NCBI RefSeq assembly: GCF_006345805.1 | Contig: NC_043024.1 | Span: forward strand, 7,378,001 to 7,442,000 | Direction of reading: 5' to 3' | DNA length: 64,000 nucleotides | DNA from: Octopus sinensis | Lineage: Eukaryota | Shown here: positions 1 through 62,031 of the stretch, piece by piece | How positions within the stretch are numbered: the first letter of the stretch is position 1 | Layout of the letters: every line of letters starts with the position of its first letter | Translations under genes and position numbers: made by a program | Notes under the pieces: model-generated | What the model was told of the DNA's origin: nothing | The model's input: the letters and a program-made list of their open reading frames with translations, nothing else | Databases searched by the model: none

Positions 1-323
1 CTATATTCCTACAAAGTTTGCAGGTGCCGAAGGATTTTAGGCATCTCCAAAGGGCCCCAGGCATTGTCCAAGTATTGCAACTACATAGCAAGACAGGCAA
101 GACGAGAGACCTGAAGACCTGAGAATTTGTCCTGCTCAGAATAGTTCAAGCTAAATTGCATTCTGCTTCCTTCTGGTGACCATCCTGTCTTTTTTCTTTT
201 GTTTATAATGAATCTCTTTACCTTTTTTTAGTTTTTTTTTTTAACTGTTCATGTGACAATGTAGAATTCTTCTTCAGTGAAAATTTTGAAGAAAATGGTA
301 ACATTTGATTTGGAATCACTTAC

Positions 324-378
324 GTTTCGGAGGACATTTCATGGATTTGAGATCAACTCTTGGAATTATGAGTTTTCC
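324..378 (-). CDS. Putative 55-nt coding exon (GKLIIPRVDLKSMKCPPK + 1 nt) of a secreted-protein gene
   Basis: Minus strand: acceptor ttgagattttcAG (AG at 380-379), open frame in phase 0, donor GTAAGT at 323-318; phase matches the upstream exon ending at 4332. Confidence 0.7.
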
Positions 379-403
379 CTGAAAATCTCAAAAGGATATT
401 GCA

Positions 404-624
404 AAACAACAACAACAACAACAACAACAACCACCAATACCACCACCACCACCACCACAACAACAACAACAACAAGTACAACAACAACAAGTACAACAAC
501 AACAACAGCAACAACATCAGCAACAACAACAACAACAACAACAACAACAGCAGCAACAGTAACAGCAGCAACACTACTACTACTACTATTACTACTACTA
601 CTACCACTACTACTGCTGCTGTTG

Positions 625-677
<53 letters not shown>

Positions 678-723
678 ACTACTACTACTACTACAACTAC
701 TACTACTGCTGCTGCTGCTGCTG

Positions 724-759
<36 letters not shown>

Positions 760-778
760 ATAATAATAATAATAAAAT
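404..778. repeat. Compound trinucleotide microsatellite (AAC/ACC/AGC/ACT/GCT/AAT)
   Basis: Directly visible; source of the poly-T/L/N ORFs at 277-979. Confidence 0.97.
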
Positions 779-1049
779 TAATAACTGATTTCCTTTATTG
801 GCCACAAGAGTCCAAGACATTGAGGACAATATCAAAAGACGACTTACAACACACAAAAACAAAACAAAATTAAAATTAAAAAAGCAAAAACATGTATATA
901 TGGGGAGGGTCAGAGTTTTCTTAGGACAAGGTACGACAGCCAGACTATAGTACACCACAGAGGTGATATATGCATTCACTACTTCTGCTCAGGTAACGGA
1001 CAAAAACGGGAAGGCAAAACTTGCCCCATGATAAAAATTGCAGGAAACA

Positions 1050-1985
1050 CAGATACAGAACGACTTTATCTGCCAAGAAAAGAGGGAGGCCGTGGACTTT
1101 TACAACTGGCAATAACAGTGAAGATTGCTACAATTGGCCTAGACACCTACCTGAAAAACTCTGAGGACTGGATGTTAAAACTTGTCTCAAAACATTAAAA
1201 CAAGAAAGCATCATACTCAGTAACAAAACAGGCAAAGGAATATCTAAGTGAATTCCAAATACAACAAATTCCGGAATTAGAGATAAACATACAAGAAACA
1301 GGCACAGAAAAAGCTAAGCGCATGAAAACCCGTGCTAAATCTGCGGCCTTAGATATTCTGAATGATAAATGGCAAGAAAAACCTCTCTATGGCAAATACC
1401 CTCCAGTGCTTGAAAATGATCACATCTCACTCTTCTGGAACTTCACCATTCAAACTGACAGAAAGATAGACGAGAATAGGCCAGACATCATATTGAAAGA
1501 CTTCAGACAAAAATCATGCCTCCTCATTGATATGACTGTCCCAATCGATATGAACATATCTGTCAAGACCTACCAGAAACTGAGCAAATATAAAGATCTT
1601 GAAATAGAAATTAGCAAAATGTGGAACCTGAAGACTAAAACAATGCCTGTTGCCATAGGTGTCCTGGGAATGATAGAAAAAGGGGCTGATTGCTACGTAG
1701 CTCAGATACCAGGAAACCCCAAAATGGTAGAAATTCAAAAGATAGTGCTCATGGGAACTGCTCATATCCTACGCAAAATACTTCCTATGTAATCTCAAGT
1801 TTTAAAACAAACATAATTTTCTTATGGTTTCTTAAACATTCTCTAGAACAACACTATGTACAAAACCAAATATATGGCACACTAGGCATAACACCAACAT
1901 GAACTCCAACTTGTTGTCTCTTGAGGTCTCTGGGTGAGACTTGGAGCCAACTTGTACAAATGTAAAGCAAAAGTCAAACATAAAA
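1050..1985 (+). mobile_element. R4/Dong-like non-LTR retrotransposon, 3' fragment (RT C-terminus, RLE endonuclease, 3' UTR, (TAA)n tail)
   Basis: DTERLYLPRKEGGRGLLQL at about 1050-1110; RLE-type NRPDII...LLIDMTVP...K..KY in ORF 1322-1792; (TAA)n tail from about 1984. Confidence 0.8.
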
Positions 1986-2002
1986 TAATAATAATAATAA
2001 TA

Positions 2003-2090
<88 letters not shown>

Positions 2091-2102
2091 GAAGAAGAAG
2101 AA

Positions 2103-2416
2103 GAATGATAGCAAAAGGGGCTGATTGCTACATAGCTCAGATACCAGGAAACCCCAAAATGGTAGAAATTCAAAAGATAGTGCTCATGGGAACTGCTCAT
2201 ATCCTACGCAAAATACTTCCTATGTAATCTCAAGTTTTAAAACAAACATAATTTTCTTATGGTTTCTTAAACATTCTCTAGAACAACACTATGTACAAAA
2301 CCAATATATGGCACACTAGGCATAACACAACATGAACTCCAACTTGTTGTCTCTTGAGGTCTCTGGGTGAGACTTGGAGCCAACTTGTACAAATGTAAAG
2401 CAAAAGTCAAACATAA

Positions 2417-2447
<31 letters not shown>

Positions 2448-2466
2448 TAATATAATAATAATAATA

Positions 2467-2535
<69 letters not shown>

Positions 2536-2553
2536 GAAGAAGAAGAAGAAGAA
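2103..2553 (+). mobile_element. Second tandem copy of the Dong-like 3' end plus (TAA)n(GAA)n
   Basis: Near-identical to 1667-1983. Confidence 0.9.
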
Positions 2554-2869
2554 GAATGATAACAAAAGGGGCTGATTGCTACATAGCTCAGATACCAGGA
2601 AACCCCAAAATGGTAGAAATTCAAAAGATAGTGCTCATGGGAACTGCTCATATCCTACGCAAAATACTTTCTATGTAATCTCAAGTTTTAAAACAAACAT
2701 GATTTTCTTATTGTTTCTTAAACATTCTCTAGAACAACACTATGTACAAAACCAAATATATGGCACACTAGGCATAACACCAACATGAACTCCAACTTGT
2801 TGTCTCTTGAGGTCTCTGGGTGAGACTTGGAGCCAACTTGTACAAATGTAAAGCAAAAATCAAACATAA

Positions 2870-2910
<41 letters not shown>
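2554..2910 (+). mobile_element. Third tandem copy of the Dong-like 3' end plus (TAA)n
   Basis: Near-identical to 1667-1983 and 2103-2418. Confidence 0.9.
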
Positions 2911-2912
<2 letters not shown>

Positions 2913-3492
2913 GCTCTGATGCAGTACCAGACAGTGGCTCTCATGGCATCTGATCTCAGCTGATTGGAAGTGTTATCACGTACATTGTTTTGTCTTGGTA
3001 TAAAAGATGGGCTACAGCAAATATTCTGCTCAATACCACAGATTTGCTTGTCAGTTGTTTGACCTTAACCAGTTGAGCATGTCCCTTAGTGGGTGAAATT
3101 ATGTGCATCTCTGATCACGAGCAGAAGTAGTGGGGGAGCATCATAGCCATGTGTTGAGAGAGATTCTTTGGGGTTTGAATAGTTCACATCTGGAAATATG
3201 GGTGTTTCGTTCAACATCCTTTAACAATCCTTATTCAGGGACCTTTTGAGCATGATGGGTTACTCGACCAGAAGAAAAAATTCTAACTGGGCCCCACCTG
3301 CAAGGTCATGCGCTGTTTATCTTGATATGAGATCACCATGTCGTGCACATATGGTTGTGATGCATGTGCCTGGTGTACCTTTATCAGACGGGTAGTCATG
3401 ATGGGTATATTGGGCTTCGTATATTTTTACCCCAGTGTCACTTTGATGGCATACACTGCTCTCTCACTCAATAATAATAATAATAATGATAA
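2911..3492 (+). mobile_element. Unclassified (TAA)n-tailed retroposon (probable LINE 3' UTR or SINE)
   Basis: Ends ctctcactc(aat)n; homologous copies at 27108-27590 (-) and 32999-33560 (+). Confidence 0.75.
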
Positions 3493-3712
3493 TGGTTTCA
3501 GATTTTGGCACAAGGCCAGCAGTTTTGAGGAGGGGACAGTAAGTCGATTAGATCGATCCAAGTGTGTAACTGGTACTTATTTTATTGACCCCTATCAGGA
3601 CGAAAGGCAAAGTCGACCTGAGTGGAATTTGAACTCAGAACATAAAGATGAACAAAATGCCACTGAGGAATTTGTCTGGTGTGTCAATGATTCTGCTAGC
3701 TTGCTGCTTTAA
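3493..3712 (-). mobile_element. SINE family B (tRNA-derived; GTCGACTTTGCCTTTCATCC core, Meta-domain-like)
   Basis: Reverse complement of the family-B head and core seen at 35637 and 59366. Confidence 0.75.
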
Positions 3713-3834
3713 TAGATATAATTTTGAAAAATAAAAGCAGTATAATAGACCACATTATTTATGGGATGACCCAATAGTACTAGTTGTAAACAGATTTTAT
3801 AAATGTCGAATAAATAGATAAAACTGTTGACAAG

Positions 3835-4003
3835 TGGAGGAGTGGCTGTGTGTTAAGTAGCTTGCTAACCAACCACATGGTTCCGGGTTTAGTCCCACTG
3901 CGTGGCATCTTGGGCAAGTGTCTTCTGCTATAGCCCTGGGCCGACCAATGCCTTGTGAGTGGATTTGGTAGACGGAAACTGATAGAAGCCTGTCGTATAT
4001 ATG

Positions 4004-4034
<31 letters not shown>

Positions 4035-4295
4035 TATATATATATAATATATATATATATATCTATGTGTATGTGTGTGTGTTTGTGTGTCTGTGTTTGT
4101 CCCCCTAGCATTGCTTGACAACTGATGCTGGTGTGTTTACATCCCCCGTCACTTAGTGGTTCGACAAAAGGGACCGATAGAATAAGTACTGGGCTTGCAA
4201 AGAATAAGTCCCGTGGTCGATTTGCTTGACTAAAGGCGGTGCTCCAGCATGGCCACAGTCAAATGACTGAAACAAGTAAAAGAGTAAAAGAGTAA
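3835..4295 (+). mobile_element. SINE family A (tRNA-derived, internal (TA)n(TG)n, AAAGAGT tail)
   Basis: A-box-like TGGCTGTGTG and B-box-like GGTTTAGTCCC; more than 20 copies in the window. Confidence 0.9.
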
Positions 4296-4331
4296 GTGGC
4301 AAATACGAAGAAATGTAAAAACGTTCCTTAC

Positions 4332-4568
4332 CTTGTTTTCTTGGAGAGCAAGGGTGTAGGAATATGAGGAGCTAAGGAATTTGAAGCACTCTCCTTTATT
4401 CAAAATGAACCCATATGTAACATTATTGGTGTCAGGACTCCAACGTGCTGCAATTGTTTTCGCTTGAACACAGACACACTCACCAGTAAATGCATCAGAA
4501 GGTTTTGCCATGAAAGCCAATACCAGAAGAATTGATGGTAGCAGGAACTGTCTGCTGTTGGTTGTCAT
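4332..4568 (-). CDS. First coding exon (79 aa) of a putative secreted protein: signal peptide plus Cys-containing domain resembling an SH3b-like module
   Basis: MTTNSRQFLLPSILLVLAFMAKPSDA hydrophobic leader, then FTGECVCV...GECFKF; donor AAG|GTAAGG at 4331; branch-like CTAAT followed by an AG-free stretch ending at the AG directly before the ATG; non-repetitive sequence. Confidence 0.75.
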
Positions 4569-4654
4569 CTTGATTTAAACAGACAAACATTTGGAGAATA
4601 GCAATTAGTTAAAGTTCATTATAAGTATACATACACATCAGATGATTGCCTCAT

Positions 4655-4890
4655 CTTATTTCTTATTGCCCACAAGGGGCTAAACATAGAGGGGACAAAC
4701 AAGGACAGATAAAGGGATTAAGTCGATTACATCAACCTCAGTGCGTAACTGGTAATTATTTAATCAACCCTGAAAGGATGAAAGGCAAAGTTGACCTCGG
4801 CGGAATTTGAACTCAGAACGTAACGACAGACGAAATACTGCTAAGCATTTTGCCCGGTGTGCTAACGATTCTGCCAGCTCGCTGCCTTAT
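4655..4890 (-). mobile_element. SINE family B
   Basis: Full head and core on the minus strand. Confidence 0.85.
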
Positions 4891-5359: not shown

Positions 5360-5830
5360 CATAAAATACAAAACAGATCAAAAAGGGAAATGATATTGAG
5401 ATACTTGCTCAAAACTTTCTCCAGTTTTGTGAAGGGTGGGTTTTACAACAGGATAATGACCCTAAGTACATGGCAAAGTCTACCCCAAAATGGATTATCG
5501 ATCACAATATAAAATTATTAGAATGGCCAAGCCAGTCACCTGAATTGAACCTCATTGAAAATTTGTGGCGTTATTTGAAAATTAAAATTCATTCAAGAGC
5601 CCTAATGTGCATTGCAGATTTGAAGAAAATTTGTCAAGAAGAATGGGAAAAAATTCCTAAAGAAACATGCGAGTCATTGATTAAGAACTACAAGAAGAGA
5701 TTGGTTGAAGTGGAACTGAATAATGGTTATGCTACGAAGTATTAAATCAGAATTATCAGTTATTTATGTTCTCTACAAATACTTTCTTCACCCCTAAATA
5801 TTTATAATTGAAAATAAATTCCTTAGTAAC
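5360..5830 (+). mobile_element. Tc1/mariner transposase C-terminal fragment (DD34E-type)
   Basis: QQDNDPKY then WPSQSPELNLIENLW, ending VELNNGYATKY; ORF 5470-5745. Confidence 0.9.
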
Positions 5831-11625: not shown

Positions 11626-12065
11626 ATATATATATATATATATATATATATGTAGGCATGATCATTTATATGTAAATGAAAGTAATTGAGAAGTAAAGAA
11701 ATGGTTAGGAGAAGTGATAATATCAAACCTTGAAAGTGTTGTTCTTGCTTGGTTTGTTGTTTCTGTGGAGCCGACCGGGTTGTTGTGAAGGGAGAAATGG
11801 GGTTTGCTATTTATATGTTGTGACAATCGCACAAATACACGCATGTGCGTGCGCGCGCGGACACAAACACACTTTAACATGCAGATAAAAACCACTTGAA
11901 ACAAGTGTGTGTCCACATAGAATGTGTCTACATATGTAGGCATGTGTGTGTGTGTGCATGTATGTGTACACATAACCAACACACACACACATATATATGC
12001 ACATACATATATATACACAACTTCTAATTGAATTATACATATATATATATATAGATAGATAGATA

Positions 12066-23234: not shown

Positions 23235-23681
23235 TCGTCATCATCATCGTTCGACTGTGGTCGAGACAATGGAATTTACCATGCTACGCCAGATTTCACG
23301 GTCCATCATAGCATTACGGAGGTCCTGTTGCTGGATGCCTGTATCCCTGGAAATTACATCAGGGTAGGAGAGTGTGCGCCCTCTGGTGTTGCGAGTAGAT
23401 GGCTTCCAGAGGAGAAGAGTAGAAATTGACTCGTTTTCAGCTCTACAACAATGTCCAGCAAACTGGACTCTTCTACTTTTCACAAGAGATGACACAGGTG
23501 GTAGTTTCCCATATATTTGCATTTTGGTTGGATGGCACTTCCACGAGAGATTTTGAGCTCTCATAAGGAGGCGAGTGTAGGTTCCATCCAACCGCCTCTG
23601 AAGCTTCTTTGATAATGTCCAGGTTTCTGAGCCATATAGTAGAATTGGTTCGACTGTGGCTTTGAAGATTTCAAGTTTGAA
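23235..23681 (-). mobile_element. 5'-truncated RTE-clade-like LINE (second family; ORF ends at the (GAT)n tail)
   Basis: KATVEPILLYGSETWTLSKKLQRRLDGTY...VQFAGHC; copies at 29790-30078 and 30640-31010. Confidence 0.85.
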
Positions 23682-24371
23682 AGAGCAGTGCATGCCATCA
23701 GAACGGATGTGTGCCACTGTAGGGGTTCTCTGATGTATCTTTTACCATTTTTCTTTCACCTGTTTTGGTCCCTGGATTGTGACAATGCTGGGGTATCCCT
23801 TCAAGGGTTAAGTCCAGTGCTTCTCAACCATTTTTCCACCTCTGGACCCCTTTTATTCCTATTTTACATGTATGGACCTTCATAACTATTTCATTGTATC
23901 TTTTTTTTTTATCTCTTTTACTTGTTTCAGTCATTAGACTGTGGCCATACTGGGGCACTGCTTTGAAATTTTTTGTCAAATGAATTGCCCCAGGTGCTAA
24001 TCTATCTTAAGCCTGGGATTTATTCTATTGCTTTTTGCTGAACTGCTAAGTCTTGGGGACATAAACACACCATCACTGGTTATCAAGTAGCGGTGGGGGA
24101 CAAACACAGATACAAATGCACACACACACACAAGCACACACACACACACATACACACAATGGGCTTCTTTTAGTTTCCATTTACCAAATAGGTGTAGATG
24201 TGGCTGTGTGGTAAGAAGTTTGCTTCCAAACTACATGGTTCCGGGTTCAGTCCCACTGTGTGGCACCTTGGGCAAGTGCCTTCTACTTTAGCCTCGGGCC
24301 GACCAAAGCCTTGTGAATGGATTTGGTAGACGGAAACTGAAAGAAGCTTTCTGAATAAAGAAACAGAATTA

Positions 24372-26370: not shown

Positions 26371-26673
26371 GTGATTTAAAAAAGGTAATATAAAAGGAGA
26401 AAGGGGCTCTCTATCCCCCTTTTGACCAGGCTCCCGTTGGCTTTTATGGGGTTTTTTCCACCAGGAATCTGTCGTAACGCCTCCCCCTTTTGGGGAGATT
26501 TTCATTGTTATAATCTTTCATTCTTTAAACTGTTTTTTACTCGATTTCACAAACGGACAAAACCCTTTGTAACTTTTCATCCTGTTTTGTCCCTTTATGT
26601 GATAATTGATTTTTGTCAGCCCTTGTGGCCAATAAAAGAATTAATTATTATTATATTATTATTATTATCATTA

Positions 26674-26727
<54 letters not shown>

Positions 26728-26729
<2 letters not shown>

Positions 26730-27066
26730 TATGTTTGACTTTTGCTTTATGTTTGTACAAGTTGGCTCCAAGTCTCACCCAGAGACCTCAAGAGACAACA
26801 GGTTGGAAGTTCACGCTATTATGCCTAGTATGCCATATATTTGGGTTTTTTTTTTGTGTTGTACTAGTGAATGTCTAATAAATAAATTTAAAAAAAAAAG
26901 TTTGTTTTAAACCTTGAGATTACATAGAAAGTATTTTGCGTAGGATATGAGTAGTTCCCATGAGCACTATCTTTTGAATTTCTGCCATTTTGGGGTTTCC
27001 TGGTATCTGAGTCAGGTAGCAATCAGCCCCTTTCGCTATCATTCCTAGGACACCTATGACAACAGC
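26728..27066 (-). mobile_element. Dong-like LINE 3' fragment with TAA repeats on both sides
   Basis: Reverse homology to 1650-1983. Confidence 0.85.
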
Positions 27067-27076
27067 TTTATTATTA

Positions 27077-27107
<31 letters not shown>

Positions 27108-27110
<3 letters not shown>

Positions 27111-29330: not shown

Positions 29331-29789
29331 ATGCTATCTCAAGACAAGAAGAAGAGAGATTCCAGACATTATATAACCACCAAATAGCATACAAATAGCA
29401 AATACACTGTAATTATTGAGAAATCGCCAGCTTGGAGATTACCAGCGACACAATGATCTTTTGTAAGTCTCTGAGGAGGGATACAGTAAAAAATATGCAA
29501 GATTTAATTGTTGACATCATAAAAATTTATAAACCTAATACTATACTAATTACAAGAAAATTGCATCAAAAGGTATGTGACAATGATGTCAGACATGGCA
29601 TGCAGACCATCATATAACTTGTTTGATATTGTGTTTTTATTCTTGTCTTTCATTTCATTTTGATATGTGCATTGCCTTTTTATTCTTCTCTTCTGTTTTA
29701 TGAATACAGTGTGCACATACACATTGTGCGTTCATTCTTCTTTTTCTGGTTCCTACCCAAAATTGTTTACAGATCACAACCATCAGATG

Positions 29790-30078
29790 AACTGTGCGCC
29801 CTTTGGCATTGCGAGTAGATGGCTTCCAGAGGAGAAGAGTAGAAATTACCTCTTTTTCAGCTCTACAACAATGTCCAGCAAACTGGACTCTTCTACTTTT
29901 CACAAGAGATGACACAGGTGGTAGTTTCCCATATATTTGCAGTTTGGTTGGATGACGCTTCCACGAGAGATTTTGAGCTCTCATAAGAAGGCGAGTGTAA
30001 GTTCCATCCAACCGCCTCTCAAGCTTCTTTGATAACGTCCAGGTTTCTGAGCCATATAGTAGAATTGGTTCGACTGTG
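29790..30078 (-). mobile_element. RTE-clade-like LINE internal fragment
   Basis: TVEPILLYGSETWTLSKKLERRLDGTY. Confidence 0.85.
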
Positions 30079-30098
30079 TTTATATATATATATATATA

Positions 30099-30611
30099 TC
30101 TATATATATAAAACTCTAGTTGTGTGAGTGTCTGTCCCCTTCGATTTAGATTCCTAACTCCTCCCACATTTTGCGGTGCAGTTTAACCAAATTCGGGTAT
30201 CTTATAGTCGTGATTCATATCGAGCCCGTCTGGGTATTAGCGCGCGTCAACGATGAGTCTACGATTTTAAAAATAATTTAACATCATTTTTTTATTCCAT
30301 TTTAATGCATAAAATGCATCGTATGTCGATGGCGGCGGAGTTGGCGTCCATGGTCACACCTGCACCTGTTTGCTTCTCCCCCTTCCCTCCCTCGTGAAGC
30401 TGTGGGGAAGGGAGTGTAAAGAAATCAACGTCGTAATGCGTTGTGAAGGAGACCAGCGTTCTTTTAGAACAACGACTTCATGGCTTGAAGATACCAAAAC
30501 AGAAATGGCCAAGAAAACCCGAATTGGCATCTATAAAGGAAGTAACTCTCTAAAAATGCTTATATAGTTATTTCCCTTACAAACCCGAGCAACGCTGGGC
30601 GATACTGCTAG
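30099..30611 (+). mobile_element. Non-autonomous Helitron
   Basis: 5' TC at 30099, 3' CTAG at 30608-30611, subterminal hairpin CCCGAGCAACGCTGGG at 30584-30599, inserted between A and T in (TA)n, no TSD. Confidence 0.85.
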
Positions 30612-33561: not shown

Positions 33562-33673
33562 CCTTTCTACAATAGGTACAAGGCCTGGGAATTTGGGGGA
33601 GGGGACCAGGTGATTAAATCGACCCCAGTATTTCAATTATACTTAATTTATCAACTCTGAAAGGATGAAAGGG

Positions 33674-33702
33674 TATGTACGTATATATGTATGTATGTAT
33701 GC

Positions 33703-33734
<32 letters not shown>

Positions 33735-34575
33735 GCAGGCATGTATACATGTATGTATATATGTACGTATCTATGTATATATGTATGTATGCTTGTATGG
33801 ACTGTATCACTGTATCTATGCATGTATGTATGCATGTATGTATACACGCATGTATGTATGTATTCAGGCATGCATGCATGGACATATGTATGTATCTCTG
33901 TATATATGCATGCATGTACGTATGTATGTATACATACATGTATGTATGCGCGTATATATGCATGTATATATGCACGTACGTATCCAAGTATGTATGCATA
34001 TATGTACGTATGTATGCATGCATGTATAGACGTATATATGTACGTACGCATCTCTGTATCTATGCATGTATGTACGTACGTATGTATGTATGTATGCATG
34101 CATGTATATACGCATGTATGTATGCATGGACATACGTATGTATCTCTGTATGTATGTATGCATGCATGCACGTACGTATGCATGTATGCCTGCATGCATG
34201 TGTATATATATGCATGCATGCATGTATGTATGTATGTATGTGTGTATGTATGTATGTATGTATGTATGTATGCATGTATATATGCATGTATGTAAGTACG
34301 TATACATGTATGTATGCTTCTACGTACGCATGTATGTATGCATGTATGTAAGTACGTATACATGTATGTATGCTTCTACGTACGTATGTATGTATGCAAG
34401 TGCGTACGTACGTAAGTATGTATATCTGCATGCATGTATGTATGTATGTATGTATGTATGTACGTACGTAGCCATGTATGTATGCATGTATGCAAGTGCG
34501 TACGTATGTATGTATATCTGCAAGCATGTATGTATGTTTGTACGTACGTATCCATGTATACACGTATGTACGTAC
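33674..34575. repeat. ~900-bp purine-pyrimidine alternating tract (TATG/CATG/TACG)n
   Basis: Directly visible; source of the M/Y/V/C/H ORFs. Confidence 0.95.
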
Positions 34576-34835
34576 AGGCAAATGCATCAGTTGACGAAAC
34601 GCCAATTTTCTCTTTTTTTGACATTTCGTACTGCGCATGCTCAACCGGATACCGACCGTCAAAACTGTAAAAGAATGTCAAACAATCTTAAACGCAAACA
34701 CAAATTCACGAAGAAAATAATTTGACATCGGACATAGACACAGTAAATCAATATCCCTCATATGTACCTATATCTCTACTATTGTGCCTTTAAATTAGAC
34801 GTAGACAGAATATGGATTTAATTGTTCAGGTAAAT
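34575..34835 (+). promoter_or_regulatory. Candidate promoter or first exon of the 37956 zinc-finger gene
   Basis: Unique in the window, CpG-containing; TGCGCATGCTCA at 34632-34643 (11/12 to the NRF1-type palindrome); donor-like CAG|GTAAAT at 34830. Confidence 0.3.
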
Positions 34836-37955: not shown

Positions 37956-39722
37956 ATGGAAAATAAATTATGCGAGAACAATGTTAAATGTAAGACAGAG
38001 ACTACAGGAGTTTGTTTTGCTGAGGTTATAAAGAAAGAGAAAGAAAAGACCTATTACTGTGATATCTGTAAAAAATCATTCTCGCATAAAAGCAACCTTG
38101 CCACTCACAAACGTATTCATACAGGGGAGAAACCGTATCACTGTGATATCTGTTGTAAGTCCTTCTCACAAAAGGGTCACTTGAGAAGCCACAGGCATAT
38201 TCATACAGGAGAGACACCGTATCAGTGTGATGTCTGTGGCAAGTCATTCTCTGAAGGAAGTAACTTAACTAAACACAAACGTATTCATACGGGAGAAAAG
38301 CCCTATCACTGTGACACTTGTGGGAAATCTTTCTCAGTAGTGAGTCACTTAACCACTCACATACGCGTTCACACAGGGGAGAAGCCATATCACTGTGATA
38401 TCTGTGGTATATCTTTCTCTCAGATAAACACTTTAACTATCCACAAACATATTCATACAGGTGAGAAACCATATCACTGTGATATCTGTGGTAAATCATT
38501 CTCCGACGGAAATACCTTAACTATACACAAACGCAATCATACAGGTGAGAAACCGTACCTCTGTGATATCTGTGGTAAATCATTCTCTCTAAATGGTGAC
38601 TTAACTATACATAAGCGTATTCATACAGGGGAGAAACCATATCACTGTGATATCTGTGGTAAATCTTTCTCTGAAGGAAGTACCTTGATTACTCACAAAC
38701 GTATTCATACAGGGGAGAAACCGTATCACTGTGATATCTGTTGTAAGTCCTTCTCACAAAAGGGTCACTTGAGAAGCCACAGGCATATTCATACAGGAGA
38801 GACACCGTATCAGTGTGATGTCTGTGGCAAGTCATTCTCTGAAGGAAGTAACTTAACTAAACACAAACGTATTCATACGGGAGAAAAGCCCTATCACTGT
38901 GACACTTGTGGGAAATCTTTCTCAGTAGTGAGTCACTTAACCACTCACATACGCGTTCACACAGGAGAGAAGCCGTATCACTGTGATATCTGTGGTATAT
39001 CTTTCTCTCAGATAAACACTTTAACTATCCACAAACGTATTCATACAGGGGAGAAACCATATCACTGTGATATCTGTGGTAAATCATTCTCCGACGGAAA
39101 TACCTTAACTATACACAAACGCAATCATACAGGTGAGAAACCGTACCTCTGTGATATCTGTGGTAAATCATTCTCTCTAAATGGTGACTTAACTATACAT
39201 AAGCGTATTCATACAGGGGAGAAACCATATCACTGTGATATCTGTGGTAAATCTTTCTCTGAAGGAAGTACCTTGATTACTCACAAACGTATTCATACGG
39301 GAGAAAAGCCATATCACTGTGATATCTGTGGTAAATCATTTTCTGTGGTAAGTCACTTAACCACTCACATACGCGTTCACACAGGAGAGAAACCATATCA
39401 TTGTGATATCTGTGGTATATCATTCTCCCAGATAAATACCTTAACTAGACACAGACGTATTCATACAGGCGAGAAACCATATCACTGTGATATCTGTAAC
39501 AAATTGTTCTCTGATGGCAATACCTTAACCATACACAAGCGTATTCATACAGGCGAGAAACCCTACCAATGTGATATCTGTGGTAAATCATTCTCTCGAA
39601 CTGGGGACTTAACTAGACACAAGCATATCCATACAGGAGAGAAACCATATCATTGTGATATCTGCGGCAAATCATTTTCTCACGCAGGTAATTTAACTAG
39701 ACACAAGTATATTCATACATAA
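37956..39722 (+). CDS. C2H2 zinc-finger protein, 588 aa, 20 tandem fingers, no recognisable effector domain
   Basis: Uninterrupted ORF; 20 CX2CX12HX3H units with TGEKPY linkers. Confidence 0.95.
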
Positions 39723-42134: not shown

Positions 42135-43022
42135 TCTCCGCAGAGGAGAAAAACAAACCTTACAAAAACCAAAAAATGACAAGTCGATCATTATAAAAGA
42201 AGCTGACAAAGGTGGAGCAATAGTAATTATGGATACAGATTACTACAAAGAAAAGATACTGGAGATGCTTAACAACCAGACACACTATAAAAAGGAACCA
42301 ACAGCACCGGAGAAAGCAACAATAAAAAAAATTAGAACTTTAGTCAATGAATACCAGGACTCCTTTACAGATAAGGAGAAAGACTATCTATGCAACTCAA
42401 GAACCAAAGATAGCAACTTTTATGGATTACCTAAAATTCATAAAAGCTCTGAAATACAGAGATCCATGAAGGAACAGAGGAACCACTATATAAGAATACA
42501 AAGGCCTGCAGACCTCGCAATGAGACCAATAGTGGCAGGACCTGCACCAACACAGCAACTAAGCCACTTCATTGATGTACTCCTCAAACCTTTATGCCCA
42601 CAGATACCAAGCTACATAAGGGATGACATAGACTTCCTCACACACATTCCAAATACAGTTCCGAAAAACACCATACTTGCAAGCTTCGATGTCACAAACC
42701 TATACACAAACATACCACTCACCCTAGGTCTGGAAGCAATAAAACAATCGGTAGAAAAATGCAGGGAACTCACAGACGAACGTTTCAAGACAGACTTTAT
42801 CACCCATGCCACCCAATTAATACTCGAAGAAATACATTCTCATTCAACAACAAGACATACCGACAGATAAAGGGCACGGCTATGGGTACAAAATTTGCAC
42901 CTTCATATGCCAACCTGCTGATAGGTTTCCTGGAGGACAAACTATACGATGAAATAGGGAAAGTCTTCGAACACGACTTCAGAGAAGACATCAAGAAAAA
43001 GTGGAAACGCTACCTCGATGAC
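42135..43022 (+). mobile_element. Penelope-like element, RT N-terminal part
   Basis: IIKEADKGGAIVIMD, MRPIVAG, ASFDVTNLYTNIP, GTAMGTKFAPSYANL, WKRYLDD (frameshifted). Confidence 0.9.
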
Positions 43023-44390: not shown

Positions 44391-45566
44391 TCAGAAGAAG
44401 ACCTACAAACATTCCACAACATTCTCAACACACTGCACCCATCTATTAACTTCACAATAGATACCAGCCACAACGAACTTCCCTTCCGAGACATCAACAT
44501 CAAAATACACAACTCCATCATCACAACAGACATCCACTACAAAAAACCGACACACACCAATATTTAAATTTCCACTCCTGCCACCCATCCCACATTAAAA
44601 GAAACATCCCATATAGTATGGCAAGACAAATATGTAGCATAGTAACTGACTCACAAACATGACTAATAAGACTAGATGAACTTAAAAACTTCCTACTAGA
44701 GCAAAAATACCCCCTTAAACTAATAAAAGATGGAATCACAAGAGTAATGAAACTAGACATAGCACAACTCAGGACACCCAAAACAAAAAACATTATCCCT
44801 TTCATAAACACGCACAACCCTGGAGTTACCAACATGTTCCAAATCATACATTCATACCTGCCAATAGTCTTACAAAGCCCCAAAATGGAAAACATACTAA
44901 ACAAATATTGCATAAAAAACAGTAGACGACAGGACAAAAACCTAAAGAAACACCTAACAAGAGCGAAATTCTCTTCAGAAACTAAACCTGAATTCTTTGC
45001 AAAAGAGTGTAGAGATGGTAGATGTGGGATCTGCAGTAACCCCACCTACAAATACATAGAGGGAGACAAAGAAATGAAATTTAAAAGTGGTCACGTATTT
45101 AAAGTAAATGCAGATATGAACTGCAAGATGCAGAACGTAATATACTGCATAACCTGCCCCACGTGCAAGGAGGATTACATAGGTGAAACCGGAAATTCTT
45201 TGTGCCGACGAACTAAGATTCACAGACAACATGTCCGACAGGAAGAACTGCGCAAGATACCACTGAGTAAACACCTAGATACATGTGGAGAAGGAAAATG
45301 TAAGATCTTTCTCTTCTACAAATGTCCAAAGAATGACACCTCCTTCAGGAGGAATATGGAAAAATATTTCATAACTAAGTTCTCCCCCAAATTGAATGGT
45401 TGAAAATATCTCTATAATAAGCTGTACCAGATGAAGGACCAAATTTGTTAAGTAAACTGTGTTAAACACACACACACACAGAGTTCTACACATATGTTTT
45501 GGTTTTTGAAAATACAACATTGAGCAAAGGATATTCTAATATTTGAATGAAACCATTTCACTTTAA
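44391..45566 (+). mobile_element. Penelope-like tandem copy 2 (RT C-terminus plus GIY-YIG endonuclease)
   Basis: ORF 44747-45403 with NVIYCITCPTCKEDYIGET...RRTKIH; ends gaaaccatttcactttaat. Confidence 0.9.
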
Positions 45567-49777: not shown

Positions 49778-50845
49778 ACATCATCATTGTTTAACGTCCG
49801 CCTTCCATGCTAGCATAGGTTGGACGGTTCAGCTGGGGTCTGGGAAGCCAGAAGGCTGGACCTGACCCAATCTGATCTGGCAGTATTTCTACGGCTGGAT
49901 GCCCTTCCTAACGCCAACCACTCCGTGAGTGTAGTGGGTGCTTTTTACGTGCCACCGGCACAGGTGCCAGACGACGCTGGCAAACAGCCACAATCAGATG
50001 GTGCTTTTTACGTGCTACTGGCACAGAGGCCAGACGAGGCTGGCAATGGCCACAATCGGATAGTGCCTTTTACGATCCACCGGCACAGAGGCCAGTCGGG
50101 GCGGCACTGCCTACGGCCACATTCAGATGGTTCTCTTACGTGCCACCGGCACTGGTATCAGAGCTACAAATTCCATTGATCTTGATTTTGATTCTGATTC
50201 TCATTTGCCTCAACAGGTCTTCACAAGTAGAGTTTTATGTCCCAAGAAGGGAAGGTATGCATACGTAGGCTGGCTCCATCCCAGGTAAAGGCCACGAGTT
50301 ATGGCCTCACTTGTCCTGCTGGGTCTTCTCACGCACAGCATACTTCCAAAGGTCTCGGTCTCTAGTCATTGCCTCAGTGAGAACTAAAGTTTGAAGGTCG
50401 TGCTTCACCACCTCGTCCCAGATTTTCCTGGGTCTACCTCTTCCACAGGTTCCCTCAACCGCTAGGGTGTGGCACATTTTCACACAACTATCTTCATCCA
50501 TTCTTGCTACATGACCATACCAGCGCAAACGTCTCTCTTGCACTCCACAACTGAGGCTTCTTAGGTCCAACTTTTCTCTCAAGGTACTTACACTCTGTTG
50601 AGTATGAACACTGACATTACACACCCATTGGAGCATACTGGCTTCATTTCTTGCGAGCTTACGCATATCCTCAGCAGTCACGGTCCATGTTTCACTGCCA
50701 TGTAGCATGGCTGTTCGTACACATGCGTCATACAGTCTGCCTTTTACTCTGAGCGAGAGGCCTTTTGTCACCAGCAGAGGTAAGAGCTCTCTGAAATTTG
50801 CCTAGGCTATTCTTACTCTAGCAGCTACACTTTCAGCACACCCGC
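49778..50845 (-). mobile_element. RTE-clade LINE, 5'-truncated (ORF2 C-terminus, 3' UTR VNTR, GAT tail)
   Basis: KGRLYDACVRTAMLHGSETW...RRLRWYGHVARM...GRGRPRKIW. Confidence 0.92.

Positions 50846-59332: not shown

Positions 59333-62031
<2,699 letters not shown>

What the first reader, a model, noticed from the sequence alone, without database searches (positions are those of the whole stretch)
324..4568. Hidden spliced gene for a secreted Cys-containing protein, possibly with a bacterial-type SH3b module
Seen: minus-strand exon 4568-4332 (ATG directly after an acceptor AG, donor GTAAGG, exactly 79 codons) splices in phase to exon 378-324 (CAG acceptor, GTAAGT donor). The product reads MTTNSRQFLLPSILLVLAFMAKPSDA-FTGECVCVQAKTIAARWSPDTNNVTYGFILNKGECFKFLSSSYSYTLALQENK-GKLIIPRVDLKSMKCPPK..., a signal peptide plus a ~70-aa domain with four Cys (CxC...C...C). 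The ORF track shows only a read-through into a SINE. Inference: the pattern resembles SH3b-like cell-wall-binding modules I associate with molluscan secreted antibacterial proteins (PGRP/amidase or lysozyme fusions). The remaining exons lie left of the window.
Basis: partly seen in the sequence, partly recalled or inferred. Interest (0 to 1): 0.75.

Follow-up and report, generated by a model that had tools for sequence, protein, structure and literature searches.

The report
Octopus PGRP gene, SH3b-like N-terminus
The two exons are real and begin an already annotated Octopus sinensis immune gene: a secreted peptidoglycan-recognition protein whose small four-cysteine N-terminal domain is predicted to fold like a bacterial-type SH3 domain, an architecture already known in oysters and snails.

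Summary
Minus-strand exon 4568-4332 (79 codons, donor GTAAGG) and exon 378-324 (CAG acceptor, GTAAGT donor) are as described.

Window 1-21844 is 100% identical to Octopus sinensis CM016886.1. The joined peptide occurs exactly in RefSeq XP_036370400.1 ("peptidoglycan recognition protein 3"). The O. vulgaris orthologue CAI9741612.1 is 96% identical over exon 1 and identical over exon 2. A 953-bp transcript-like contig from another octopod spans the same junctions.

The missing C-terminal part, left of the window, is a PGRP/Amidase_2 domain with the zinc and catalytic residues conserved.

No sequence method identifies the roughly 70-aa N-domain as SH3b: Pfam finds nothing, hhalign gives E 0.1, and BLASTP finds nothing. 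Three other lines support it:
- It sits where gastropod PGRPs carry a Pfam-significant SH3_3 domain.
- It shares their CxC...C...C framework.
- AlphaFold2 predicts a seven-strand barrel (pLDDT 79-85), with or without gastropod sequences. All but a few weak, low-TM retroviral integrase matches among the listed Foldseek neighbours are SH3 domains. The best is the SH3b-bearing NlpC/P60 protein 3h41 (TM 0.75).

SH3b+PGRP proteins are already described in oyster. The result is an ordinary, already annotated gene plus a modest domain re-annotation.

The parts
11729..11844 (-). Upstream first exon of the annotated gene. It is most likely promoter plus 5'UTR rather than coding. It holds a TATAAATA box at 11815-11808, and the donor GT is at 11728-11727.
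   Evidence: The 39-aa N-terminal extension of XP_036370400.1 maps here. The ATG at 11844 lies upstream of the TATA-like box. With canonical GT/AG splicing its frame ends in TGA at the junction. Paralogous copies in O. vulgaris differ by indels that are not multiples of three.
4332..4568 (-). First coding exon (79 codons). The predicted signal peptide is 4568-4491 (MTTNSRQFLLPSILLVLAFMAKPSDA). It is followed by the first 53 residues of the four-Cys SH3b-like domain.
   Evidence: It is identical in XP_036370400.1 and 96% identical in the O. vulgaris orthologue. It lies in a non-repetitive island, 4297-4653.
379..4331 (-). Intron of 3953 nt (GTAAGG...CAG), made almost entirely of repeats. It contains a SINE-like copy at 3838-4296, (TA)n, another SINE-like copy at about 3540-3700, three tandem units of about 450 bp at 1668-2912 separated by (ATT)n, and trinucleotide microsatellites at 406-808.
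   Evidence: It is collinear at about 96.5% (BLAST; 98% over aligned columns in MAFFT) with the O. vulgaris intron.
324..378 (-). Second coding exon (55 nt, GKLIIPRVDLKSMKCPPK plus 1 base). It encodes the last strands of the SH3b-like domain, including the fourth conserved Cys.
   Evidence: It is identical in the O. sinensis and O. vulgaris proteins and shows 0 differences in 55 nt between the species.
1..323 (-). Start of the next intron (donor GTAAGT at 323-318). The next exon, where the PGRP domain begins, lies about 2.65 kb left of the window start.
   Evidence: Exon map of P0082 on locus L002, where L002 position = 21845 minus window position.

Best explanation
Window 11844-1 (minus strand) holds the 5' end of an Octopus sinensis short-type peptidoglycan-recognition protein gene (RefSeq XP_036370400.1; O. 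vulgaris orthologue CAI9741612.1).

The gene is laid out as follows:
- A non-coding first exon at about 11.8 kb.
- The ATG exon 4568-4332.
- The 55-nt exon 378-324.
- Three further exons left of the window that encode a PGRP/Amidase_2 domain.

The likely main product is a secreted protein of about 278 aa. It has a cleavable signal peptide, a disulfide-stabilised (4 Cys) and highly diverged SH3b-like beta-barrel, a short linker, and a zinc amidase-type PGRP domain.

Inferred mechanism: the protein is secreted into haemolymph or onto gut and epithelial surfaces. The PGRP domain binds peptidoglycan and cleaves the MurNAc-L-Ala bond. This scavenging or bactericidal role is the one known for Drosophila PGRP-SC/LB and squid EsPGRP2. 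The SH3b-like module provides an additional cell-wall or glycan contact, as proposed for oyster MgPGRP5.

Shown here: the exon structure, orthology, the PGRP domain, conservation of the catalytic residues, and the predicted SH3-type fold. Inferred: secretion, disulfides, ligand binding by the N-domain, and amidase activity.
For: Locus and splice junction:
- Window 1-21844 is 100% identical to O. sinensis CM016886.1.
- XP_036370400.1 contains exon 1 plus exon 2 verbatim.
- The O. vulgaris orthologue is collinear at about 96.5% and gives the same junction.
- A 953-bp contig encoding a 226-aa homologue spans the junctions without introns.

PGRP domain:
- Amidase_2 scores E 2e-22 to 4e-47.
- The best solved relatives are PGRP structures (4zxm, 1sk3, 1oht).
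- H138/H139, Y173, H247 and C255 are invariant in the alignment. By established PGRP knowledge these correspond to the zinc ligands and the catalytic Tyr.

N-domain:
- Gastropod PGRPs of the same length and layout hit Pfam SH3_3 above the curated cut-off (32.7 and 35 bits against 27) at the equivalent position.
- All seven sequences align four Cys with similar spacing.
- AF2 models with gastropod sequences (pLDDT 79.4, pTM 0.61) and from cephalopods only (pLDDT 84.6, pTM 0.66) give the same seven-strand barrel.
- Foldseek neighbours are overwhelmingly SH3 domains. All 50 listed in the first search and all but five weak retroviral integrase matches in the second are SH3 domains or SH3-bearing proteins. 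The highest TM-scores are for bacterial SH3b in NlpC/P60 proteins (3h41: TMq 0.75, rmsd 2.2 A; 4r0k/3npf: 0.67). Also listed are 9ovi (SH3-like bacterial-type domain), 9a7d (which I recall as an SH3b-bearing amidase) and 2krs (a Clostridium SH3 domain).

Literature:
- SH3b+PGRP is a described molluscan architecture (MgPGRP3 and MgPGRP5, PMC11810698).
Against: No sequence method links the cephalopod N-domain to SH3b:
- Pfam gives no SH3 hit at E<=10.
- hhalign against the gastropod domain gives probability 0.6%, E 0.1.
- A profile search of PDB sequences finds nothing.
- BLASTP finds nothing.
- HMMER over 1.84 billion proteins finds only the orthologue.

Foldseek E-values are marginal (0.02-0.4), as expected for a 70-residue barrel. 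The structures are predictions from 5-7 sequences. The tryptophans seen in the gastropod SH3_3 domains ('GGW...' and 'GW', which I take to be the usual SH3b aromatics) are absent in octopus, so ligand binding may have changed or been lost.

The signal peptide was judged by eye only (n/h/c regions, S at -3 and A at -1). No RNA-seq from O. sinensis was examined. RefSeq models a different product: 481 aa with a 39-aa N-terminal extension and two PGRP domains.
Confidence: 0.85

Rival explanations
1. The N-terminal four-Cys domain is a cephalopod-specific small beta domain that is not homologous to SH3b. On this reading the SH3-like prediction reflects a generic small-barrel topology, and the Cys alignment with gastropod PGRPs is a product of the aligner.
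For: All sequence-based tests are negative: hhalign E 0.1 at probability 0.6%, no Pfam hit and no BLASTP hit. Foldseek E-values never fall below 0.019. MAFFT rewards Cys-Cys columns strongly.
Against: The domain sits at the same position as the gastropod SH3_3 domain, between the signal peptide and the PGRP domain, in proteins that are otherwise 35-41% identical over 88-94% of their length. The CxC...C...C spacing is the same. The cephalopod-only model still finds bacterial SH3b as its best structural neighbour, at TM 0.75.
Confidence: 0.15
2. The real product is the 481-aa RefSeq protein. It would start at the upstream ATG (window 11844), so the hydrophobic segment would be internal. It would continue past the first PGRP domain into a second one, giving a tandem-PGRP protein like mammalian PGLYRP3/4.
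For: XP_036370400.1 is modelled this way. A GTAAAA donor overlaps the stop codon of the last exon. The downstream PGRP unit has no detectable signal/N-domain exon of its own in either species.
Against: With the canonical donor (GT at 11728-11727) and acceptor (AG at 4570-4569) the upstream frame reads TCA AGA TGA, a stop. The RefSeq junction 'SK|M' needs a non-canonical intron. The ATG at 11844 lies upstream of a TATAAATA box, and paralogous copies carry frame-breaking indels. The last exon of the first unit runs straight into TAA after ...WPHFIKKIM in both species. The O. vulgaris annotation, the paralogue P0004, and the cuttlefish and gastropod homologues are all single-PGRP proteins of 259-288 aa that start at the signal peptide.
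Confidence: 0.15
3. The two exons are a chance ORF plus chance splice signals, or a dead pseudogene fragment.
For: Splice-signal statistics alone are not significant: 2 candidates found against about 1 expected. Exon and intron divergence between the two sister species are similar, at about 98%.
Against: The same intact, spliced ORF exists in two species. Transcript-like contigs exist in a third octopod. Full-length homologues exist in cuttlefish and gastropods. All downstream exons are open.
Confidence: 0.02

Closest known systems
Octopus sinensis 'peptidoglycan recognition protein 3' (XP_036370400.1) and O. vulgaris 'peptidoglycan-recognition protein SC2-like' (CAI9741612.1)
   Same: It is the same locus in O. 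sinensis (100% DNA identity) and the direct orthologue in O. vulgaris (96% over exon 1, identical exon 2).
   Different: The two database models disagree with each other and probably with the real transcript at both ends. The RefSeq model adds 39 N-terminal residues through a junction that needs a non-canonical intron, and it fuses a second PGRP unit. The O. vulgaris model ends in 'EEGS' instead of reading ...EWPHFIKKIM*. Neither record annotates the N-terminal domain.
Molluscan SH3b+PGRP proteins: oyster MgPGRP3 and MgPGRP5 (PMC11810698) and the gastropod PGRPs of Gigantopelta aegis and Charonia tritonis
   Same: The layout is the same: signal peptide, an N-domain of about 60-70 aa, and a single PGRP/Amidase_2 domain. 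Identity to the gastropod proteins is 35-41% over 88-94% of the length. The CxC...C...C cysteines are shared.
   Different: The gastropod domains pass Pfam SH3_3, while the octopus and cuttlefish domains do not. The tryptophans present in the gastropod domains are lost in octopus. Oyster sequences were not aligned here.
Bacterial SH3b cell-wall-targeting domains (Pfam SH3_3; e.g. the N-terminal SH3b domains of NlpC/P60 protein 3h41, and lysostaphin SH3b)
   Same: The predicted fold matches: a seven-strand SH3-type barrel, with TMq 0.75 and rmsd 2.2 A to 3h41.
   Different: Sequence identity is about 14% and there is no profile match. The octopus domain has four cysteines, presumably forming two disulfides, which typical bacterial SH3b domains lack as far as I know (not checked here). 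Ligand binding is untested.
Amidase-active short PGRPs (Drosophila PGRP-SC/LB, Euprymna scolopes EsPGRP2, amphioxus PGRP3 4zxm)
   Same: The PGRP domain has His/His/Cys zinc ligands and the Tyr conserved. The protein is secreted and short.
   Different: Those proteins lack an SH3b-like N-domain. Amphioxus PGRP3 carries a different N-terminal module, which I recall as chitin-binding.

Membership tests
PGRP / Amidase_2 (PF01510) | Significant match to the PGRP/Amidase_2 domain | tested here: met
   The full gene products P0082 and P0001 score E 4e-47 and 2e-22. The top PDB relatives are all PGRPs. The domain is encoded left of the window, so the window itself holds only the two upstream coding exons.
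PGRP / Amidase_2 (PF01510) | For the catalytic subgroup: zinc ligands His, His, Cys and the catalytic Tyr retained (Cys is replaced by Ser in non-catalytic PGRPs) | tested here: met
   H138/H139, Y173, H247 and C255 (P0001 numbering) are invariant in alignment A1. Mapping them to the catalytic roles rests on established PGRP-LB and T7 lysozyme knowledge, not on a test here. Enzyme activity itself was not tested.
PGRP / Amidase_2 (PF01510) | For the short secreted class: an N-terminal cleavable signal peptide | tested here: inconclusive
   The sequence shows an n-region with Arg, a 14-residue hydrophobic core, and S at -3 and A at -1 before FTGEC. No SignalP-type predictor was available. The RefSeq model places 39 residues in front of it.
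Bacterial-type SH3 (Pfam SH3_3 PF08239 / SH3b) | Significant sequence-profile match to SH3_3 | tested here: not met
   No SH3 family appears at E<=10 for any cephalopod protein. hhalign against the gastropod SH3_3 domains gives E 0.1, probability 0.6%. A profile search of PDB sequences gives 0 hits.
Bacterial-type SH3 (Pfam SH3_3 PF08239 / SH3b) | SH3-type beta-barrel fold with SH3b structures as nearest neighbours | tested here: met
   This was tested on predicted models only. Two AF2 runs gave pLDDT 79.4 and 84.6. Foldseek against PDB returns SH3 domains for nearly all of the listed matches in both runs. The best is the SH3b-bearing 3h41 at TMq 0.75.
Bacterial-type SH3 (Pfam SH3_3 PF08239 / SH3b) | Positional homology to bona fide SH3_3 domains in orthologous proteins | tested here: met
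   Gastropod PGRPs P0008 (residues 27-77) and P0022 (residues 30-85) pass the SH3_3 gathering score at the position of the octopus domain. Four Cys columns are shared by all seven sequences.
Bacterial-type SH3 (Pfam SH3_3 PF08239 / SH3b) | Peptidoglycan or cell-wall binding | not testable with these tools
   This needs pull-down or binding assays. The tryptophans of the gastropod domains are missing in octopus.

The most novel reading that the evidence does not exclude
Cephalopod PGRPs carry a fast-evolving, disulfide-stapled descendant of the molluscan SH3b module. This module has lost the canonical aromatic binding residues and acquired a new ligand specificity, for example for particular symbionts, parasites or non-peptidoglycan glycans. 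It would be diversifying in a tandem PGRP cluster, where one copy has also lost the module and may be read through to make a two-PGRP-domain protein.
Probability: 0.2. Interest if true: 0.4.

Novelty: new member of a known kind. Interest (0 to 1): 0.22.

Why it matters
This mainly serves as validation and clean-up. A reader with no tools correctly recovered a spliced immune gene and its domain logic from raw sequence.

Biologically, it extends the molluscan SH3b+PGRP architecture to cephalopods. There the module has diverged beyond the reach of Pfam and is therefore unannotated.

It also flags probable errors at both ends of the public gene models for this locus.

Octopus PGRPs are candidate regulators of gut and gill microbiota. 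They respond to coccidian infection (PMC4199593), so a correct gene model and domain map is useful for that work. It does not open a new question.

Tried and rejected
- Pfam on exon 1 alone and on the read-through ORF gave only a sub-threshold DUF6867 match.
- A PDB sequence search with exon 1 gave noise.
- A search for paralogous copies of exon 1 in the window found none.
- Region-restricted homologue searches with the octopus and cuttlefish N-domains returned only the query's own cluster and, for octopus, the one O. vulgaris paralogue P0004. A deeper cephalopod alignment could therefore not be built.
- The two repeat-protein hits of the 1.84-billion-protein search (P0002, P0003) are low-complexity matches and were discarded.
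- hhalign, BLASTP and a PDB-profile search between the cephalopod N-domain and SH3b were all non-significant.
- Exon against intron conservation between O. sinensis and O. vulgaris was uninformative, because the species are too close.
- ARAGORN found no tRNA-like gene in the flanking SINE-like repeats.
- I did not fetch the solved Clostridium SH3b chains labelled 'enterotoxin' as yardsticks.
Full report
**1. What is in the sequence**

On the minus strand, an ATG at 4568 sits directly after AG (4570-4569). It opens a 79-codon exon that ends at 4332 before GTAAGG. A 55-nt exon, 378-324, is preceded by TTTTCAG and followed by GTAAGT, and it continues the frame as GKLIIPRVDLKSMKCPPK.

The mechanical ORF list shows only a 112-aa read-through into the intron. 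That read-through runs into a repeat, 3838-4296, which recurs many times in the window. Exon 1 itself lies in a unique island, 4297-4653, between two repeat copies.

The 3953-nt intron is almost all repeats. It holds SINE-like copies, (TA)n, three tandem units of about 450 bp separated by (ATT)n, and 400 bp of trinucleotide microsatellite that ends 28 nt from the acceptor.

Splice signals alone would not prove the second exon. A simple scan finds two candidates in 4.3 kb, against about one expected by chance.

**2. Proof of the gene model**

A full HMMER scan of 1.84 billion representative proteins with exon 1 gave one real hit. It is a 269-aa protein that is 96% identical over residues 1-79 and then continues with exactly the exon-2 peptide. 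This protein is CAI9741612.1, 'peptidoglycan-recognition protein SC2-like' of Octopus vulgaris.

Its 90% cluster also holds XP_036370400.1, 'peptidoglycan recognition protein 3' of O. sinensis. That protein contains the window's exon 1 plus exon 2 peptide without a single difference.

Fetching that gene's locus showed that window 1-21844 is 100% identical to O. sinensis CM016886.1. The window therefore is that locus. The O. vulgaris locus is collinear with window 85-4657 at about 96.5%.

A Logan contig of only 953 bp encodes a 226-aa homologue (59% identity) that runs uninterrupted across the equivalent junctions. This is transcript-type evidence from a third octopod.

**3. The rest of the gene**

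On the O. sinensis locus the next exons lie 2.65 kb and further to the left of the window. They encode a PGRP/Amidase_2 domain. Its closest solved relatives are amphioxus PGRP3, human PGRP-I-alpha/PGLYRP3 (1sk3) and Drosophila PGRP-LB and PGRP-SA.

The two His, the Tyr and the Cys are invariant in the alignment. In PGRP-LB and T7 lysozyme these residues bind zinc and catalyse amide cleavage. An amidase-active PGRP is therefore predicted.

The last exon of this unit reads ...LYNVIKKWPHFIKKIM and then TAA, in both species. This gives a protein of about 278 aa. That matches the 259-288 aa single-domain homologues in the O. vulgaris paralogue, cuttlefish and gastropods.

**4. The N-terminal domain**

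No sequence method calls it SH3b:
- Pfam finds nothing for any cephalopod protein.
- hhalign of the five cephalopod domains against the two gastropod domains gives E 0.1 and probability 0.6%.
- A profile search of PDB sequences and BLASTP both find nothing.

Three independent observations support it:
- (i) The Gigantopelta and Charonia PGRPs align with the octopus protein over 88-94% of its length. They carry a Pfam-significant SH3_3 domain (32.7 and 35 bits against a cut-off of 27) exactly where the octopus domain sits. Their domain in turn hits solved bacterial SH3b structures.
- (ii) All seven sequences share the CxC...C...C cysteines with similar spacing.
- (iii) AlphaFold2 gives a confident seven-strand barrel both with the gastropod sequences (pLDDT 79.4) and, as a control, with cephalopod sequences only (pLDDT 84.6). 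Foldseek against the PDB returns SH3 domains for all 50 listed matches in the first run. In the second run all but five weak, low-TM retroviral integrase matches are SH3 domains. In the cephalopod-only run the best match is the NlpC/P60 protein 3h41 (TMq 0.75, rmsd 2.2 A), which I recall as carrying SH3b domains. It is followed by other SH3b-bearing hydrolases at TMq 0.67, whereas eukaryotic SH3 domains reach only 0.53-0.62.

I therefore call it an SH3b-like module. It is probably homologous to the molluscan PGRP SH3b domain but has diverged beyond profile detection. It has lost the tryptophans that the gastropod domains keep. Whether it still binds peptidoglycan is unknown.

**5. Problems in the public models**

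The RefSeq protein starts 39 residues earlier, at an ATG at window 11844 in an upstream exon. Several points argue that this exon is promoter plus 5'UTR and that the ATG at 4568 is the start, as in the O. vulgaris model:
- With the canonical donor (GT at 11728-11727) and the AG at 4570-4569, the joined sequence reads TCA AGA TGA, a stop. The RefSeq 'SK|M' requires a non-canonical intron.
- That ATG lies upstream of a TATAAATA box (11815-11808).
- Paralogous copies of this exon in O. vulgaris differ by 1-, 2- and 4-nt indels.

RefSeq also fuses a second PGRP unit through a GTAAAA donor that overlaps the stop codon. That downstream unit has copies of the 5' exon and of exon 2, but no detectable copy of the signal/N-domain exon. 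A tandem-PGRP isoform therefore cannot be excluded without RNA data.

The O. vulgaris model ends in 'EEGS', which looks like a mis-splice into the neighbouring unit.

**6. Comparison with what is known, and verdict**

SH3b+PGRP proteins have been cloned and assayed in the oyster Magallana gigas. MgPGRP5 binds and agglutinates bacteria and fungi (PMC11810698). PGRPs have been reported from O. vulgaris haemocytes and shown to be induced in caecum and gills of coccidia-infected animals (PMC4199593). The published qPCR primers fall in this tandem cluster, with the best match to the neighbouring unit.

It concerns an already annotated member of a known family with a known molluscan architecture. 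The only new elements are the SH3b-like assignment of the cephalopod N-domain and the corrections to the gene models. Interest is low to modest.

Noticed in passing
window 11729-11844 and 4568-4571 (minus strand): The 39-aa N-terminal extension of RefSeq XP_036370400.1 cannot be reproduced with a canonical GT-AG intron, because the canonical junction gives TCA AGA TGA. The upstream ATG also lies 5' of a TATAAATA box at 11815-11808.
   Followed up: partly
L002 36322-36540 and 44866-55673 (O. sinensis, left of the window): The first PGRP unit ends in TAA right after ...WPHFIKKIM, yet RefSeq splices on to a second tandem PGRP unit. That unit has copies of the 5' exon and of exon 2 but no signal/N-domain exon.
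   Followed up: partly
L001 21430-21640 (O. vulgaris): The O. vulgaris model CAI9741612.1 ends '...NVIKEEGS', whereas the exon reads on as ...NVIKEWPHFIKKIM*. The annotated C-terminus looks like a mis-splice towards the next paralogue, about 17 kb away.
   Followed up: partly
L001 39774-39791, 44738-44754, 47687-47703, 16531-16548: The qPCR primers published for the infection-induced O. vulgaris 'PGRP' (PMC4199593) map to this tandem cluster. The reverse primer is exact in the neighbouring unit (two sites), and the forward primer has one mismatch in both units.
   Followed up: partly
window 1668-2912: Three tandem copies of a unit of about 450 bp, each followed by a long (ATT)n/(CTT)n microsatellite, lie inside the intron. 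A related copy is at 26640-27110.
   Followed up: no
window 406-808: A 400-bp compound trinucleotide microsatellite (CAA/CAG/CTA types) ends 28 nt upstream of the exon-2 acceptor. It generates long spurious ORFs on both strands.
   Followed up: no
window 37956-39722 (+) and 59765-60715 (+): Two long C2H2 zinc-finger ORFs of 588 aa and 316 aa, with 16 and 8 zf-C2H2 stretches reported by Pfam. They are typical of the octopus ZNF expansion.
   Followed up: partly
window 44747-45403 (+), 42229-42870 (+), 5470-5745 (+): Transposon remnants: a GIY-YIG endonuclease ORF (Penelope-like element), with an upstream ORF at 42229-42870 that resembles reverse transcriptase by eye but had no Pfam hit, and a DDE_3 (Tc1/mariner-type) transposase fragment just upstream of the PGRP ATG exon. 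Further ORFs that look like LINE reverse-transcriptase tails, identified by eye only and again without a Pfam hit, are at 23244-23717, 29655-30167 and 50307-50771 (minus strand).
   Followed up: partly
window 33614-34725: About 1.1 kb of imperfect TAYRYR-type minisatellite gives overlapping 200-250-aa 'YIHT/CMYV' ORFs on both strands. It is not coding.
   Followed up: no
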